Below are positions 3,382 through 10,849 of a stretch of 32,000 nucleotides of DNA, piece by piece. The notes beneath the pieces were generated by a model, which worked only from the letters and a program-made list of their open reading frames with translations, had not been told where the DNA came from and made no database searches. The stretch comes from Paramicrosporidium saccamoebae KSL3 (Eukaryota; Fungi; Cryptomycota), in NCBI GenBank assembly GCA_002794465.1, contig MTSL01000219.1, positions 11,459 through 43,458 on the forward strand, written 5' to 3'. A program made the position numbers and the translations under genes. Each line of letters starts with the position of its first letter. Positions within the stretch are counted from its first letter, which is position 1.

Positions 3382-4554
3382 TCAGGACTTGTTGGCGAAT
3401 ATGAGAAGGAGCCGGCGTCGAACGCTCGTCTTGACCTGATCAATACGATCCTTAATTAACAAGTAGATTCCCTTCTTTTCCTCAACTGGCGCTCGTTCTA
3501 TAATCTTTTGCAGCACATAATTGGCATATTGATCAAACGCCATTCTTCTCCAAATATCCGTATCGGATAGATGCTCCCTGACCAGCTGTCCAATCCGCTC
3601 AGAAGATACAACATCAGTAGCCTACCATTAGACACAGTCTTGCAATAACCTTTTCGACTACATTGGATCCATACTTGTGCAGAAACAGCTGGTCAAAGTT
3701 GTCTATCACTTTGGTTGCACACTCTTGGCGGCCATTTGCGTCCGACACATCCATGCAATGTTGCAGGACATAATTTCCATATTGATCCTAACAAGTCAGG
3801 GGGAATTATTAGCTCGTAGTACTAAAGCAAGCTCGACTACGTGTTCCAAGAGCTTGGTGTGAAGGTTTGGACAGGATGCAGACAGCTTTTCAAGACACTT
3901 TTTCAACAAGCAACATCCGAATCGATCGGTGCCAGCCTGCATAATGTTTTCTTCCAAATATCCGGCAATAAACTATGTCCATCAGTTTTCTGGACCCTGA
4001 GTACATGGCAATCATCTGCAGTGTGCGTGTCAATATATTGCTGCAGAATAGTAGCGCCATACGGACATTTGAGCATACTGGCCATATCGCGTGCTAACGC
4101 ATCCTGTATCATCATTTTCTTCACCATATAGCCACATCTGTAATGACTACCTGTTTCGGACTTTGTAACATTGACACTAGCGAGCTCAGCACACAGGATC
4201 CATGAAGATTGCCCTGGATTCTTGGAAATGTGCTAGGAGCCAATATCTCTGCCAGCATTCTGGTCTGCAAGCACTCACTCGCTGTTTCAAAAACCTTTTG
4301 ACAAACATAGTTCCCATAGGTATCTAGAGTTACCACCGTGACAGAGGTCAGCTACTTGTAACATGGCTGACAATGTTTGGCATCATGGCTTCGGCAGTAG
4401 CAGCTGCAGCAAACAGCTGTTTGTCCTGAATAAACTGTTGCACAATCCTGCATCCACTCTGTTGCCCCAGTTGGCTACGTAGGACTTCTATATGCAACCC
4501 TCTCGCGCTTGCATGAACTGTACCTATTAGTATGGAATGGTTGAGTGGGTCCAT
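3382..4554 (-). CDS. Pumilio/PUF RNA-binding protein (Puf4/5-like), 8 repeats, about 337 aa; N-terminus uncertain (frame open to 4686)
   Basis: Exons 4554-4356, 4323-4151, 4118-4005, 3972-3823, 3787-3650, 3621-3382 (introns 32, 32, 32, 35, 28 nt). Repeat cores: GCRIVQ, GNYVCQ, GSCVLS, GATILQ, GCCLLK, GNYVLQ, GSNVVE, ANYVLQ. Confidence 0.85.
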
Positions 4555-5408: not shown

Positions 5409-5454
5409 TCTAGCGCATTCCGACTTGGATTCTCTAGTGCGAGGATATGTATCA

Positions 5455-5847
5455 TATCAACGAAACTGAAATGTCCCCAATGGTCATATTGTCGCGTAGT
5501 GGGGATAATACCACGGCCCAGTTTAGGTGAGAAGAGAATTTATTCAGTCAATCCAACGACCCATTTATAGTCTCACAAATAACATAATCCTCAAATGGTA
5601 AAGATCTCATTATTCTTGATCGATTGTTCTGGTTATCCCTTCTCCAAACTAGGGAACTATTTCCAAAAGACATGCTAATCAGTCTTCTATGTCACAGTAT
5701 CAACGAAATTGAAATGTCCCCAATAATCATAACGAAACTGGAACGTCCCCAATAATCGTAACAATGAAGCTGGAATGTCCCTAATAATCATAACAACAAA
5801 GTTAGAATGTCTTCAATAATCATAACAACGAAACTGTAATGCCCAGC
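5455..5847. repeat. Minisatellite, unit about 29-33 bp (consensus caacgaaactggaatgtccccaataatcata), about 6 units, interrupted by an LTR-like insert
   Basis: One unit at 5455-5489, then five degenerate units at 5698-5847. 5455-5481 and 5698-5724 match at 26/27 bases. Confidence 0.9.
5490..5696 (-). mobile_element. Solo-LTR-like element, copy 1 (207 bp)
   Basis: Begins TGTCGCGTAG and ends CTATGTCACA (TG..CA, 7/10 inverted); flanks ATAT/GTAT; TATAAAT on minus strand at 5563-5569; homologous to 9076-9279. Confidence 0.7.
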
Positions 5848-5904: not shown

Positions 5905-7424
5905 ATGGCGGCTGATGAGGAGACACCCTTTGAAGTGTTACTCCAATTCAGCAAATTTTTAGAGGCGCCTGCAAATGTAAAGACGGCAAAGAGCTCGTTG
6001 GTCTTGTGCATACAAAACCCTGAACTGGCGGAAGACATTATCGAACGGTCTGTAGACTCGGTCCAACAGGACCCGAAGAATAGACGGCCGATCCTTCAGT
6101 TTATGGCAACTCTATATGAACACCCGGAGGCAAAAAGCTTTCGACCGATCATTGAGAGGAGGTACCGGGACCTTGTTGATATCGGGCTACGGGGCACATC
6201 CCCCTCGGTGGTTAGGAATGCCGCCAAGGGGCTAAAGACTTTACTGCAGGCCTTTGACGACACATTCCAAGGCGAATGTGGTGATTTGAACGCTTCCATA
6301 AATGAGGCCATTGGACTGTACATTGTGGTTGCGTTTCTAATTGTGTCTAGGACTGAAGCCGAACAAAAATTTAATCAGAACAAGCAATCCGTGCTAGAAG
6401 CCATTGAGCGGGAACGTGAAAATGTATATAACCCACTCGGCTTCTCATATTGTCTAGCATAAAGCGCTGAGAGTAAGCTGCTGGAGTCGCCCTGAAGACG
6501 AGACGCCGGAGGAGGAATTTTTGTCGTTTTACAAAAAATCAGCTGGTCTCTCTGATTCAGATTTCCGACAGGCCAAGAATAATTTAGCATTATTCTGTCA
6601 GGTCAATGGACTGGAAAAGACTGAGCATCCTGTCGTTGTGGTGAATCTTGATGAAGTGATGCCTTTTATCCCCGAGCTTCGAGACAGTCGAGATTCAAAG
6701 GTCCGCCATACTGCTGAAGACTTTTACTCGGTTGTCAAGGAGATTGCTCATTTTTGCTTCTTCTATTCGGATTTGCGCGATTTTGAACAGCCACACACTG
6801 AGTACTATTGCGAGGATGATGACGGACGGAAGCTGAATGACTACGACTTTCAAAGCGATGAGCTTGCATTGTTTATCAAAGACTCTTCTATCCCCTACAC
6901 GCACAAGTTTTACCGCGAAAGGGCATATAGGAATCGTCTAGCAGCATATCGATACGACCACAACAGGGAAATTGTGAATATCATCCCGAGAGAGTTGGAG
7001 CGTGATTGCAACCGATGTAGGCAGGATTGTGATCATCTTTTCGGAAAAGTATTTTCCAAGATGAAGCACTCTTTGACGACATTAAGATCACTGGGAGTTG
7101 AAATGTGCTTCCTAACCAAAGTTCACCTTAGTCTAGCCTTGGCAATCAATGTTGCGCTCGACATCAACACTGTCGTGCCATCCCAGTCGCTGTACTCTAC
7201 CAGCAAATATGATGTAGACTGGGGATTCTCAGCTATTAGACAAAAGTACGGCGATGGGCGTAAATACATTATTGCTGGCCGATCTAAAGCAAGCAGTCGA
7301 TGCGCTGAAAAGGTGGGAAAGGCATCATTGGATCTTAATAATTTAGTTTGGTTGGAAGTATTTGGAGGTGCGACACCCAGAAGACTTTGGCAAGCTAGTC
7401 CAGGAGTTGAGGACGGCTGAATAG
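5905..7424 (+). CDS. CTK3: CTK3-like CTD kinase subunit fused to an Eyes-absent (EYA)-type HAD domain with degenerate catalytic motifs, 472 aa
   Basis: Exons 5905-6317, 6351-6423, 6458-7312, 7347-7424 (introns 33, 34, 34 nt). N-terminal TPFEVLLQF...LAEDI and IERERENHKALRVSCW...EEEF match CTK3 N and C domains. From about 6630, VVVNLDEV...FFYSDLRDFEQPH...DDDGRKLNDYDFQSD...LYSTSK...RKYIIAG...EVRHPEDFGKL aligns by eye along the EYA domain. Confidence 0.8.
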
Positions 7425-7473: not shown

Positions 7474-8951
7474 CTACGAATCTGTCTCCACGGTTTTTGC
7501 ATCTAACGGAGTGCCCGTAGTCTCTCCCAAATTGTAAGCCACGTACACGAAGCCTGCTGCGGTGATAACGGCCAGTGTTGCGTAGAGATACAAAGGATGC
7601 GCAGCGTGAATTATGGGCCAAAATGCTGTGACGGCGAGAATCTTAAAGGTGCCAGCTACGCCCATTGAGAGGGCCAAACCCTTTCCCCTGATGGCAGAAG
7701 GGAGTATTTCTGCAGAGACGACCATGGGGAGCGGCCCAATGCCAACGCTGAAGAACATTCGGTTTAGAAAGATGCCAAAAAGCGAGAGATGGGTGCATAT
7801 ATGATGGGGATGGACCTGCATCACAGCGGCCAGGATTAAGAGACTGGCAGATATTCCGGCGAGGCTGATGAGAATTGGCCCTTTCCGGCCGATACTGTCG
7901 AGATTATGCACGACGAGCCAGATTACGATTATTTGAGGCAGCATGGATAGAACTCTATAGAATATTAGTAGCTGTAATATATTGCTTACGTCATGCCGAT
8001 TGACATTTCCCGAACAAATCCCAAGTCGTGGAGAATGATGGAAGAGTAATATGTAATAATGTTGTTCCCCGATAGCTGCTGTAGGAGGTGAAGAATCAAG
8101 GTGACCAGGACCGCGTGTCGGTTTTCCTTCTTGACCAGATCACTGAACGAACTTTGCTTTTGCGTTTGTTGACCAGCATAGTCCTTGAGGATTTGAATTT
8201 CCTTTTGCAGTTGCTCATCTTCTCCTGGTCCGTAGGTTGTCTCCAATACTTTCAGGGCCTCCTCCTCTCTCCCGTGGAGCACCAACCATCTAGGCGACTC
8301 TGGAAGAGAAATCAGCGTAGTCACAATCGCGGGAATATGCAGTACTGCGCCGATCAAAAATACTATTCGCCAACTGATCGTCTTGTCGAGGTAAATGACA
8401 ATGGGCAGCGCACAAAGGTTTGCCAAAATGCCGCCGATCCATCCGGCCAGTTCGCCGTACCCTTGGAGGGAGCCACGAATTTTGCTTGGTGAAATCTCTG
8501 CTAAAAACAAACCAGCTCCCACCGAATTCAATCCTATGGACAGCCCAGTGAACAGTCGGCCAATGATGATGGCCCAAGTACCTGGGGCAAAGGCCGACAA
8601 GACGGCTGCCAGCAGTCCGATCACAGCACTGATTACTAATATGGGCCGTCTGCCCAGCCGGTCGCCTATCACTCCACTTGCCAAATTTCCAAGCAACATA
8701 CCTAGGAGAATCACCGAAACAATCAAGGTGGTCTCCAACACGGAGAGCTCATAGGAAAACGGAATATACAAAATCACAGCCGAGAGAAGACCAATCATAT
8801 ATCCACTGTAGAACGTTGTAATTGAGACTATTATGGTGTATTTGTAACATGCCCATGGGTATCCCGGCGGATCCACACCGGGTGGGTTGTCCGTCATACC
8901 GAAACTGGACTGGCGTGATGCAGATATAGAGGGCCTATGCTGATTGGACAC
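7474..8951 (-). CDS. MFS sugar-porter family transporter (inositol/hexose type), 480 aa
   Basis: Exons 8951-7990, 7954-7474 (35-nt intron). Motifs GDRLGRR, AEISPSKIRG, PESPRWL, QQLSGNNIITYY, DSIGRK, AEILPSAIRGKG, ETTG. Confidence 0.92.
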
Positions 8952-9340: not shown

Positions 9341-10849
9341 TTAGCGGAGATTAGAAGGGGGACTGCATGGTCTCGGAAGTCTACTATCATCGGTTGTCTT
9401 GTTTCCTTCTGTAAACTGCAATTCAGGCACCTTTGGGGATCTTCTTTGTTCAATTTCCTCCAAGGAGGCTCCCTTGGTCTCTTCCACCACCACAGCAATA
9501 AATAAAAACCCCAAAAACGCAAGCAACGCAAATGTCCAGTAAACATGGGACGGATGTGTCCATGTCACTAGCAGCGGGAAGCTAGCAGTCACGACATAAT
9601 TACACGTCCAATTAATGGCGAGTGATAGCGAGAGTGCTCTCCCGCGAATGGGAAATGGCAGCGTTTCGGCAACCAGGACACCTGGGACGGGTCCCATCCC
9701 AGCCGCAAAGAAAGCCCGATGTATGACAATTCCGACGAGGAGCATCCAAAATCGCTGATTAACCTCTTTGATAACGGTCGCGCCGCCAATGATCACAAGA
9801 CTGATTGCAATTCCAGCTTCGGAAATAAGTAAAGCCGGTCGGCGTCCATTCTTGTCCAGTGTGAACACGACTGAAATAAGCACAAGCAGCTGTGGGATAC
9901 AAGCAAGGGCATTATAAAAGAGTGCATCGCGCGATGAGTGCCCCATGGAATGGAGCAGGATGGTGCAATAATATACGATCACACTATTACCAGAGGCCTG
10001 CTGAAAGACCTGCATCAGAATGGCAATCAAGAGTGGCCTGTGATATTTTGAATCCACAATTTCGGCTTCGGAGAGACAGGTAGGTTCCTGATAATCGCGG
10101 CGGTCGCAGAGCACTTGATATTGTTGAATTATATGCGTCTCGTGAGAATCACCATAGATTTGAGTTAGCACCAAACGCGCTTCTTCATTCTGACCATTGC
10201 TCACTAGCCATTGTGGCGTCTCTGGCAGGACAGCAATCACTAATATCTACATGTTAGAACTAAACTTGTAAAGTACCCAGTGAAAGATACACAGTATTGC
10301 ACCTGATGCGAACATTGAGCGCCAACACAAGTCTCCTGCGGTGCAAGCAACCACTTCATAGCCAACAAAATACGAGACGGCTATCCCAGTCCAGCCACAG
10401 AGCTGATTAATTGCGCCCAGTTTTCCTCTAACATGCGATGGCGCCACTTCGGTAATGTAAAGCGCTGGGATCACTGACGCAACTCCCACCCCCAAACCAA
10501 GCACAAATCTACTGAGCATCATAAGCTGACTCCCATTCCCCAGGGCAGCAACCACCGCTGCCACCAACATCAGCATGTTGTTCCAGGCCAACGTCCTTCT
10601 GCGGCCCACCGCGTCGGCAATTCGTCCACTAAAGATAGAGCCCAAGATGGCGCCGATGAGAATGATGGAGACTATGGTGCTAATCTCGGCAGTGGTGAGC
10701 GAGATTGTGCGTGGGATGAAGAGGATTGCTGGGGCGATAATACCCGTGTTATATCCGTAAACAAAGGAGGAGAATGAGGCCACCAGAGTGTAGCCATATA
10801 CACTGGCAGGCAAACGTGGTTTAGGTAGATCTGGGTCTAGTTGACTCAT
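9341..10849 (-). CDS. MFS sugar-porter family transporter, tandem paralog, 492 aa
   Basis: Exons 10849-10277, 10246-9341 (30-nt intron). Motifs ADAVGRR, TEVAPSHVRGKLG, PETPQWL, QQASGNSVIVYY, DKNGRR, AETLPFPIRGRA, EETKG. Confidence 0.92.

What the first reader, a model, noticed from the sequence alone, without database searches (positions are those of the whole stretch)
5905..7424. CTK3 (CTD kinase I subunit) fused in frame to an Eyes-absent domain
Seen: after the 34-nt intron at 6424-6457 the frame runs without a stop from a CTK3-like C-terminal motif (IERERENHKALRVSCW..EEEF) through a linker of roughly 10-15 aa into a complete EYA-like domain. Removing intron 7313-7346 yields an EYA-like tail (FGWKYLEVRHPEDFGKL). 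The EYA part has no in-frame ATG of its own before motif I. Known: Ctk3 is the gamma subunit of fungal CTDK-I (Pol II CTD Ser2 kinase). EYA proteins are HAD tyrosine phosphatases and transcription cofactors of animals and plants, and are not known from model yeasts. Inference: this lineage tethers an EYA fold to the elongation kinase, an architecture I do not know from any organism. It could couple CTD Ser2 phosphorylation to a phospho-Tyr or partner-binding module.
Basis: partly seen in the sequence, partly recalled or inferred. Interest (0 to 1): 0.9.

Follow-up and report, generated by a model that had tools for sequence, protein, structure and literature searches.

The report
Ctk3 fused to dead EYA domain
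This Paramicrosporidium gene really does encode one protein that joins Ctk3, the third subunit of a fungal RNA polymerase II tail kinase, to an Eyes-absent-type phosphatase domain whose catalytic residues are lost here but kept in the Rozella ortholog, so the fusion physically links EYA domains to the polymerase-tail machinery.

Summary
Window 5905-7424 (+) is one four-exon gene of Paramicrosporidium saccamoebae (deposited as hypothetical protein PSACC_03661). It has three 33-34-nt introns and encodes 472 aa.

- **Ctk3 part.** Residues 1-210 align end to end with genuine Ctk3 (hhalign 99%; Pfam CTK3_C above its cut-off).
- **EYA part.** Residues ~217-472 have the EYA-domain fold (family profile vs EYA3/EYA2 E=1e-33/1e-29; Foldseek TM 0.81-0.86).
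- **One gene, not two.** The last CTK3_C helices and most of the EYA domain (all but its last 25 residues) lie in one exon, with no stop or Met between them. The gene is under purifying selection (dN/dS 0.09). The same fusion sits at syntenic loci of several uncultured relatives, twice as one uninterrupted ORF. It also occurs in Rozella allomycis, with an intron at the same codon.
- **Inactive here.** The nucleophile Asp is Asn, the motif III Lys is Val, and GDGxxE is GRSKAS. Rozella keeps every motif except a Lys-to-Arg change at motif III.

My best reading is a non-catalytic EYA module on the kinase's gamma subunit, descended from an active, tethered phosphatase. Two unrelated eukaryotes join CID domains to EYA domains. 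I found no paper describing any of this. It is a new variant of known kinds and moderately interesting.

The parts
5905..6317 (+). Exon 1: start codon and the Ctk3 N-terminal CID-like helical domain (aa 1-137, plus 2 nt of codon 138)
   Evidence: The ATG and the frame are conserved in L001. hhalign of the rozellid N-terminal profile against genuine CTK3 gives 99.15% probability and E=3.9e-19. The AF2 model is all-helical with pLDDT above 90.
6318..6350 (+). Intron 1 (33 nt, GTAC...CTAAT...TAG). It is in frame and is retained in the deposited model PSACC_03661.
   Evidence: It is 64% identical to L001, against 82-90% for the exons. Removing it restores the conserved motif INEAIGLTEAEQ, which relatives encode without interruption.
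6351..6423 (+). Exon 2: first helix of CTK3_C up to ...IEREREN (aa 138-162)
   Evidence: The Pfam CTK3_C match starts at aa 149, which is nt 6382.
6424..6457 (+). Intron 2 (34 nt, phase 0). Splicing is obligatory, because retaining it gives an in-frame TAA.
   Evidence: The position and phase are identical in L001 and in Rozella allomycis L009 6557-6585.
6458..7312 (+). Exon 3 (aa 163-447). It holds the rest of CTK3_C (to nt 6601), a ~10-aa linker (6605-6631) and most of the EYA-like domain. Within the EYA-like domain: degenerate motif I VVVVNLDEV at 6632-6658; the conserved cap segments at 6758-6868 and 6908-6937; motif II region FLTKVHL at 7109-7129; motif III region YSTSKYDVDW at 7193-7222; degenerate motif IV IIAGRSKASS at 7268-7297.
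   Evidence: One open 855-nt exon spans the domain junction. Coordinates are and motifs. dN/dS across the junction is 0.11.
7313..7346 (+). Intron 3 (34 nt, GTGGG...TTAAT...TAG). The deposited model reads through it.
   Evidence: It is 56% identical to L001 and carries a 3-nt indel. The spliced tail matches the EYA C-terminus and the intron-less tail of L002.
7347..7424 (+). Exon 4: last strand and helix of the EYA-like domain (FGWKYLEVRHPEDFGKLVQELRTAE) and the TAG stop
   Evidence: AF2 predicts strand 451-454 and helix 460-471.

Best explanation
Shown:
- Window 5905-7424 is a single four-exon gene of Paramicrosporidium saccamoebae.
- After about 10 linker residues the protein continues into an EYA-type HAD domain (Rossmann-like core plus the EYA-specific helical cap).
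- The fusion is inherited. Rozella allomycis has the same architecture, with an intron at the same codon, and so do many uncultured relatives at syntenic loci.
- In this species, and in the whole clade of close relatives, the EYA domain has lost the catalytic set. The motif I nucleophile Asp is Asn. The motif III Lys is Val. The motif IV Mg-binding GDGxxE is GRSKAS.
- The cap and the fold remain strongly conserved and under purifying selection.
- The Rozella copy keeps the motifs, apart from a Lys-to-Arg change at motif III.

Inferred:
- The protein still works as Ctk3, assembling and activating the Ctk1/Ctk2 kinase-cyclin pair through CTK3_C.
- The EYA-like domain is a pseudophosphatase that serves as a non-catalytic docking or recognition module carried on the kinase complex. 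Candidate ligands are the polymerase tail or a transcription-linked partner.
- It descends from an ancestral arrangement in which an active EYA phosphatase was tethered to the CTD kinase.
For: Gene model
- Three short GT..AG introns are far more diverged than the exons between the window and sister contig L001 (56-68% against 82-90% identity).
- dN/dS is 0.09 overall and 0.11 across the junction.

Ctk3 identity
- Pfam CTK3_C scores 27.8 bits against a cut-off of 25.
- hhalign gives 99.15% probability, E=3.9e-19, over 198 collinear columns, running to the very C-terminus of genuine CTK3.
- The family profile also hits yeast Ctk3 chain 7jv7_C (E=1.2e-3).

EYA identity
- TIGR01658 gives E=1.3e-12.
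- The family profile matches EYA3 (9n0y) at E=1e-33 and the EYA2 EYA domain (ED) at 1e-29, over the whole domain.
- The AF2 model has pLDDT 86.9, and above 90 in this domain.
- The top 12 Foldseek PDB hits are all EYA2 ED (TM 0.81-0.86). Generic HADs reach only about 0.45.

The fusion is real
- The junction lies inside exon 3, with no stop or Met.
- P0030 (L005) and P0055 (L011) are single uninterrupted ORFs with the same order of parts.
- Those loci and others share the synteny Tim17/PUF, then this gene, then Sugar_tr, DUF747 and KRR1.
- The Rozella ortholog is EPZ31782.1, and its intron position is conserved.

Loss of catalysis
- Motif table; residue-level alignment to EYA3.
- Motif roles are taken from PMC8069645.

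Role of Ctk3
- Ctk3 binds both Ctk1 and Ctk2 and activates Ctk1, as summarised in PMC10746219.
Against: - There is no transcript or protein evidence for this species.
- I could not check whether Ctk1 and Ctk2 orthologs, or a second plain Ctk3, exist elsewhere in the genome.
- Pfam's CTK3 N-terminal model does not hit the window protein directly.
- Foldseek of the N-terminal model is not significant. It returns only CID-like natural proteins at TM 0.54-0.61, and no Ctk3 chain among the 50 listed.
- The non-catalytic role is inferred from lost residues only.
- Arg and Lys now sit where the Mg ligands were, so an unconventional phosphate-binding or catalytic site cannot be excluded.
- The N-terminus of the Rozella protein is only weakly Ctk3-like (hhalign 56%).
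Confidence: 0.75

Rival explanations
1. These are two adjacent genes, a short Ctk3 and a separate EYA-like gene, wrongly merged by gene prediction and by the reader.
For: - No transcript data are available.
- The deposited model PSACC_03661 is an automatic prediction and is wrong at three splice sites.
Against: - The last two CTK3_C helices and the first EYA strand are coded by one exon, with no stop, no Met and only about 10 residues between them.
- L001 has no Met at all before the middle of the EYA domain.
- dN/dS across the junction is 0.11.
- Orthologs P0030 and P0055 are single uninterrupted ORFs.
- Two independent annotations of Rozella give the same fused protein.
Confidence: 0.03
2. 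The EYA domain of this species is still an active phosphatase, for instance on CTD phospho-Tyr1, using non-canonical residues.
For: - The fold and cap are highly conserved.
- The general acid/base Asp of motif I is retained (NLDEV), and a Thr is kept in the motif II strand.
- The Rozella ortholog looks active.
- Mammalian EYA has been linked to CTD Tyr1 dephosphorylation (PMC12548103).
Against: - The nucleophilic Asp, which forms the covalent intermediate in all HAD phosphatases, is Asn.
- The motif III Lys and both Mg-binding acidic residues of motif IV are also replaced.
- The replacements differ between subclades (N, H, S, I, E or D at the nucleophile position). That is the pattern of relaxed constraint on catalysis, not of an alternative mechanism.
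Confidence: 0.07
3. The protein is no longer a CTDK-I subunit. On this view the family is an EYA-derived protein that uses a Ctk3-derived CID-like head only as a targeting device, independently of Ctk1/Ctk2, and a separate Ctk3 (or none) serves the kinase.
For: - In Rozella and in the AT-rich subclade the N-terminal domain is too diverged to be recognised as Ctk3, and CTK3_C is shortened.
- Other eukaryotes join plain CID domains, not Ctk3, to EYA domains (P0035, P0046).
- I could not search the whole genome.
Against: - In the window protein the complete CTK3_C bundle is kept above Pfam's cut-off and under strong purifying selection (dN/dS 0.055). In yeast, Ctk3 holds Ctk1 and Ctk2 together; that CTK3_C is the contact surface is from my memory of the 7JV7 paper.
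- The all-database phmmer search returned no second Ctk3-like protein that I could assign to Paramicrosporidium, though its sensitivity to plain Ctk3 was low.
Confidence: 0.15

Closest known systems
Ctk3, gamma subunit of yeast CTDK-I (S. cerevisiae Ctk3, PDB 7JV7 chain C; Pfam PF12243 + PF12350)
   Same: - Residues 1-210 are collinear with genuine Ctk3 from the first helix to the last residue.
- The CTK3_C motif E.DRE.HK.LRE..W is kept.
   Different: - Dikaryan Ctk3 ends right after CTK3_C at about 220-300 aa. This protein carries a further ~255-aa EYA-fold domain.
- The N-terminal domain is too diverged for Pfam's CTK3 model.
Eyes absent (EYA) domain of animals and plants (EYA2 ED, PDB 3GEB/3HB0/4EGC; TIGR01658)
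   Same: - It has the same HAD core plus the EYA-specific helical cap. TM is 0.81-0.86 and rmsd 2.5-3.9 A over about 265 columns.
- It shares the cap signatures FF..L...DQ.H and DDG..L..Y.F..D, and the RYR of A[FY]RYR.
   Different: - Identity is 17-20%, and it scores 48 bits against a family cut-off of 195.
- The catalytic motifs I, III and IV are lost.
- There is no SIX-type partner context.
- The N-terminal partner is Ctk3, not the disordered transactivation region.
Rozella allomycis O9G_000261 (EPZ31782.1 / RKP18583.1, UniProt A0A075ATC6, 437 aa, auto-named protein-tyrosine-phosphatase)
   Same: - It has the same order of parts: Ctk3-like head, EKDREQHK motif, EYA domain.
- It has a phase-0 intron at the same codon.
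   Different: - Rozella keeps DLDET, the motif II Ser and ADGDQE. At the motif III Lys position it has Arg, with a Lys just before it. It therefore looks catalytically competent (TIGR01658 139 bits).
- Its CTK3_C is shortened and its head domain is more diverged.
- It is not at the syntenic locus.
FCP1/SCP-type CTD phosphatases (HAD enzymes acting on the Pol II tail)
   Same: From established knowledge, not tested here: these are HAD-superfamily DxDxT phosphatases brought to the Pol II CTD by an accessory domain. The concept is the same as an EYA domain tethered through Ctk3 or CID.
   Different: - They belong to a different HAD subfamily (FCP1-homology domain, no EYA cap).
- They are Ser-specific.
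- They are not fused to a kinase subunit.
- No FCP/SCP structure appeared among the 50 Foldseek hits listed.

Membership tests
Ctk3 (CTDK-I gamma subunit) | C-terminal helical bundle CTK3_C (Pfam PF12350) at or above the gathering score | tested here: met
   27.8 bits against a cut-off of 25, covering aa 149-210 and model positions 2-63 of 65. The family profile also hits yeast Ctk3 7jv7_C residues 227-279.
Ctk3 (CTDK-I gamma subunit) | N-terminal non-canonical CID-like domain (Pfam PF12243) | tested here: met
   There is no direct Pfam hit. Profile-profile comparison with proteins that score 141.6 bits on PF12243 gives 99.15% probability, collinear from residue 7. The AF2 model is an all-helical domain. 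The best natural Foldseek hits are CIDs (Rtt103, RPRD1A/B; TM 0.54-0.61), but these are not significant.
Ctk3 (CTDK-I gamma subunit) | Forms a trimer with the Ctk1 kinase and the Ctk2 cyclin | not testable with these tools
   The window holds neither gene, and no whole-genome search or multimer prediction was available.
Ctk3 (CTDK-I gamma subunit) | Is the only Ctk3 ortholog of the genome | not testable with these tools
   Only 32 kb of the genome was available. The phmmer search of all representatives showed no second Paramicrosporidium-like Ctk3, but its sensitivity for plain Ctk3 was low.
EYA domain (TIGR01658; HAD protein tyrosine phosphatase) | EYA-domain fold: HAD Rossmann-like core plus the EYA-specific helical cap | tested here: met
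   The top 12 Foldseek hits are all EYA2 ED (TM 0.81-0.86), against about 0.45 for other HADs. The family profile matches EYA3/EYA2 at E=1e-33/1e-29 across the whole domain.
EYA domain (TIGR01658; HAD protein tyrosine phosphatase) | Score at or above the curated TIGR01658 cut-off (195.3 bits) | tested here: not met
   48.1 bits, E=1.3e-12.
EYA domain (TIGR01658; HAD protein tyrosine phosphatase) | Motif I DxDx[T/V], with the nucleophilic first Asp | tested here: not met
   The motif is NLDEV: the first Asp is Asn, and the second Asp and the Val are kept. L001 has SLDEV.
EYA domain (TIGR01658; HAD protein tyrosine phosphatase) | Motif II Ser/Thr at the end of strand S2 | tested here: inconclusive
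   FLTKVHL aligns to LITTTQL. A Thr is present, but it is one position off the central Thr in the HMMER alignment.
EYA domain (TIGR01658; HAD protein tyrosine phosphatase) | Motif III Lys | tested here: not met
   The Lys of ...TK.GKES in EYA2/3 aligns to Val in YSTSKYDVDW. It is also lost in most relatives.
EYA domain (TIGR01658; HAD protein tyrosine phosphatase) | Motif IV acidic Mg ligands (GDGxxE) | tested here: not met
   GRSKAS replaces GDGRDE. This motif is lost in every Ctk3-linked member examined except Rozella.
EYA domain (TIGR01658; HAD protein tyrosine phosphatase) | Tyrosine phosphatase activity | not testable with these tools
   This needs an enzyme assay. The sequence predicts no activity.

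The most novel reading that the evidence does not exclude

Three architectures point this way.
1. Ctk3-EYA in rozellids, apparently active in Rozella.
2. CID-SH3-EYA with intact motifs in an unidentified eukaryote (L012).
3. CID-EYA-like in a EukProt transcript.

On this reading these are 'Rosetta stone' fusions. They independently support the contested link between animal EYA and CTD Tyr1. The Paramicrosporidium clade would then have turned the enzyme into a non-catalytic reader or scaffold on the Ser2 kinase.
Probability: 0.22. Interest if true: 0.85.

Novelty: new variant of a known kind. Interest (0 to 1): 0.62.

Why it matters
Ctk3 has been regarded as a small fungal-specific assembly factor with no human ortholog (PMC10746219). 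EYA is regarded as an animal and plant tyrosine phosphatase and transcription cofactor whose N-terminal region has 'no recognizable motifs' (PMC8069645).

Why the fusion matters:
- A conserved, selected fusion of the two gives a physical, evolutionary link between EYA domains and the Pol II CTD code. It spans a deep fungal-related clade and has an apparently active version in Rozella.
- It fits reports that EYA inhibition raises CTD Tyr1 phosphorylation (PMC12548103). That paper also cites work that Tyr1 phosphorylation promotes Ser2 phosphorylation.
- It offers a simple recombinant test system: the Rozella enzyme against the naturally dead Paramicrosporidium domain.

It also corrects the public gene model PSACC_03661 at three splice sites. 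It suggests a functional label for a set of 'hypothetical proteins' in rozellid and microsporidia-like genomes.

Tried and rejected
- **Word-indexed homolog searches.** All three returned almost nothing beyond the query's own cluster. They gave no taxon names for the distant members.
- **Taxonomy of the uncultured loci.** It rests only on synteny with the window. Only Rozella, Aphanomyces and the animal EYAs carried names.
- **Pfam's CTK3 N-terminal model.** It did not hit the window protein.
- **PDB sequence search with the N-terminal profile.** It gave only a designed helical protein and a weak CTK3_C hit.
- **Foldseek of the N-terminal model.** It was not significant. I rely on hhalign instead.
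- **hhalign of the Ctk3 profile against P0066 (AT-rich clade) and against Rozella.** It was weak (26% and 56%). Ctk3 identity of the head domain is solid only for the Paramicrosporidium-like subclade.
- **Mis-merged gene, or a read-through artefact of the deposited model.** I considered both and rejected them (see rivals).
- **Literature.** No paper held Ctk3 together with 'eyes absent', or Ctk3 with 'haloacid dehalogenase', or 'CTD-interacting domain' with 'eyes absent'. None of the listed rozellid or microsporidian papers mentions Ctk3.
- **Neighbour-joining tree.** It is rough: NJ on BLOSUM distances, long branches, 67% support for the clade of degenerate domains. I use it only as a hint.
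Full report
**Source and gene model**

The window comes from Paramicrosporidium saccamoebae. The spliced product matches the deposited hypothetical protein PSACC_03661 at 97% identity. PSACC_03661 is 488 aa and is already a fused model.

I read the region directly and translated it. The 34-nt GT..AG intron at 6424-6457 carries an in-frame TAA if retained. Removing it joins ...IEREREN to HKALRVSCW...

An environmental contig from a sister species (L001, JGI 3300042204) is 82-90% identical to the window in the exons. It has the same structure. The three proposed introns are much more diverged than the exons:

| Intron | Identity to L001 |
|---|---|
| 6318-6350 | 64% |
| 6424-6457 | 68% |
| 7313-7346 | 56%, with a 3-nt indel |

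The exons are 82-90% identical. All three introns are 33-34 nt (31-34 nt in L001) and carry CTAAT-, CTCAT- or TTAAT-like branch sites. By my reading, a neighbouring transporter gene has a 35-nt intron of the same type.

The best model is exons 5905-6317, 6351-6423, 6458-7312 and 7347-7424, giving 472 aa. The deposited model differs at all three introns:
- It keeps the 33-nt intron.
- It uses other boundaries for intron 2, which deletes RENHKA.
- It reads through intron 3.

- The motif E.DRE.HK.LRE..W is conserved family-wide.
- GLTEAEQ is uninterrupted in relatives.
- The spliced tail FGWKYLEVRHPEDFGKL aligns with the EYA C-terminus.

Nei-Gojobori dN/dS between the two species, by region:

| Region | dN/dS |
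|---|---|
| Whole protein | 0.09 |
| CTK3_C | 0.055 |
| Junction | 0.11 |
| EYA-like part | 0.10 |

**The N-terminal half is Ctk3**

- Pfam CTK3_C matches aa 149-210 at 27.8 bits, against a cut-off of 25.
- Pfam's CTK3 N-terminal model does not hit directly.
- A profile of the rozellid N-terminal halves (A5) was compared with two genuine Ctk3 proteins. Those proteins score 141.6 bits on CTK3 and 78.7 bits on CTK3_C.
- That comparison gives hhalign probability 99.15%, E=3.9e-19, over 198 collinear columns.
- The alignment runs to the very last residues of plain Ctk3. The EYA part is therefore appended exactly at the normal C-terminus.
- The AF2 model of residues 1-213 is confidently helical (pLDDT 88).
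- Foldseek on that model is not significant. The natural proteins it finds are CID domains.

**The C-terminal half is an EYA domain**

- TIGR01658 matches at E=1.3e-12, though at only 48 bits against a cut-off of 195.
- The single sequence hits EYA3 at 1.5e-8.
- A profile of 18 family members hits EYA3 (9n0y) at 1e-33 and the EYA2 ED at about 1e-29, over the complete domain.
- The full-length AF2 model has pLDDT 86.9, and above 90 in this domain.
- Its 12 best PDB matches are all EYA2 ED, with TM 0.81-0.86. Generic HAD enzymes follow at about 0.45.

**The fusion is real and old**

- The junction lies inside exon 3, with about 10 linker residues and no stop or Met.
- An exhaustive phmmer search of 1.8 billion representatives found 64 relatives. 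Many match the query continuously from CTK3_C through the EYA-like domain. CTK3_C is detectable in most of those I scanned, above Pfam's cut-off in two of them.
- I fetched the loci of six of them.
  - Five (L002/L003, L005, L006, L007/L008, L011) share at least part of the window's gene order: Tim17, PUF, this gene, a convergent Sugar_tr (two copies in the window and L002), DUF747, KRR1. Their G+C ranges from 37% to 67%.
  - A Ctk3-like first exon lies just upstream in L002, L006 and L007.
  - P0030 (461 aa, L005) and P0055 (529 aa, L011) are single uninterrupted ORFs with the same order of parts.
- The weakest listed hit, P0065, turned out to be Rozella allomycis O9G_000261 (EPZ31782.1). Two independent assemblies annotate it identically, and UniProt auto-names it protein-tyrosine-phosphatase. 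It contains:
  - a Ctk3-like head (weak; hhalign 56%);
  - the EKDREQHK motif, immediately followed by an EYA domain (TIGR01658 139 bits);
  - a 29-nt phase-0 intron at exactly the codon boundary of window intron 2.

**Catalytic state**

HAD phosphatases need four motifs (PMC8069645):
- motif I, DxDx[T/V], whose first Asp is the nucleophile;
- motif II, a Ser or Thr;
- motif III, a Lys;
- motif IV, acidic residues that bind Mg.

The window protein has NLDEV for motif I. The Lys position is Val. GRSKAS stands in place of GDGxxE.

Every Ctk3-linked member at the syntenic loci is similarly degenerate, with different replacements in different subclades. Rozella keeps DLDET, a motif II Ser and ADGDQE; at the motif III Lys position it has Arg, preceded by a Lys.

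A rough NJ tree places the degenerate domains in one clade (67% bootstrap). Rozella and P0048 sit outside it, near the canonical EYAs. That is consistent with a single loss of catalysis followed by faster divergence.

The most conserved columns lie in the cap: FFY.DL..F.QPH and DDGR.L..Y.F..D.LA, plus FYRERAYR.R.

**Mechanism**

Shown:
- One polypeptide combines Ctk3 with an EYA-fold domain.
- It is conserved and under purifying selection.
- It lacks the catalytic residues.

Inferred:
- Yeast Ctk3 binds both Ctk1 and Ctk2 and activates the kinase (summarised in PMC10746219).
- The full CTK3_C is kept here. The protein therefore most likely remains the gamma subunit of a CTDK-I-like complex.
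- The EYA-like domain is then a non-catalytic docking or recognition module mounted on the kinase.
- Arg and Lys now occupy the former Mg site, so a phosphate-reading pocket is conceivable. This is untested.

**Wider context**

Two further architectures join CTD-interacting domains to EYA domains.
- P0035 is a complete ORF from a EukProt transcriptome. It has a CID/CTK3 domain (43 and 29 bits) followed by an EYA-like domain (165 bits). Its nucleophile position is Asn.
- P0046 is encoded on L012. After I joined two upstream exons, it has a full CID (37 bits, above the cut-off), an SH3 domain, and an EYA domain with intact DLDET and GDGEEE.

The literature reports that EYA inhibition raises Pol II CTD Tyr1 phosphorylation. 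The same paper cites earlier work on EYA1 and the CTD, and on Tyr1-P promoting Ser2 phosphorylation (PMC12548103).

No paper in the searchable library mentions Ctk3 together with EYA or HAD, or CID together with EYA. The EYA review knows five fungal EYA hits but no Ctk3 link.

**Verdict**

- The domain is a pseudophosphatase in this species.
- The architecture is clade-wide rather than unique to this lineage.
- It is a new variant built from two known families, with a testable bearing on what EYA domains originally did.

Noticed in passing
window 5701-5841 (related copy near 5452-5480): A 32-nt tandem repeat (CAACGAAACTGGAATGTCCCCAATAATCATAA, 4.5 copies, 77% matches) lies 60-200 nt upstream of the ATG, in the presumed promoter region. 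The upstream region is only 44% alignable to the sister contig L001, and L001 shows no matching copies of the repeat.
   Followed up: partly
window 6318-6350, 6412-6466, 7313-7424: The deposited model PSACC_03661 (488 aa) differs from the homology-supported model at three places. It retains a 33-nt intron. It uses shifted boundaries for intron 2, which deletes RENHKA. It reads through intron 3 into a frame ending ...PGVEDG.
   Followed up: yes
window 7474-8951 and 9341-10849 (- strand): Two tandem Sugar_tr/MFS transporter genes lie convergent with the Ctk3-EYA gene. The first ends 50 nt from its stop codon. Each is split into two ORFs by a short gap, which appears to be a ~35-nt GTAAG...CTAAT...TAG intron at about 7945-7985. 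A convergent Sugar_tr gene sits next to the Ctk3-EYA gene in all the syntenic relatives.
   Followed up: partly
window ~3463-4491 (- strand): A multi-exon PUF-repeat gene shows up only by tblastn and contains no long ORF. It is inverted relative to its ortholog in L002. A Tim17/TMEM135-like gene lies at 1654-2592.
   Followed up: partly
L012 3537-5776 (Logan SRR27444490): An unidentified eukaryote encodes CID-SH3-EYA. After two upstream exons are joined, the N-terminus gives a full CID match (37 bits). The EYA domain keeps DLDET and GDGEEE and carries a second SH3-like insert at residues 399-433.
   Followed up: partly
P0035 (EukProt transcript c12707_g1_i2, 453 aa): This complete ORF has a CID/CTK3 N-terminal domain, a His/Gly-rich linker and an EYA-like domain (165 bits). 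Motif I is WNLDD and motif IV is lost. The organism was not identified.
   Followed up: partly
P0043, P0056 (Aphanomyces invadans, A. euteiches): Oomycetes carry stand-alone EYA domains with intact motifs (TIGR01658 183 bits). The review PMC8069645 states that a query of protozoa returned no EYA-like proteins.
   Followed up: no
L002 5750-5800 and 5955-5990: In this relative the two introns that must be removed from the Ctk3 head appear to begin with GC rather than GT (my reading). I did not verify this.
   Followed up: no
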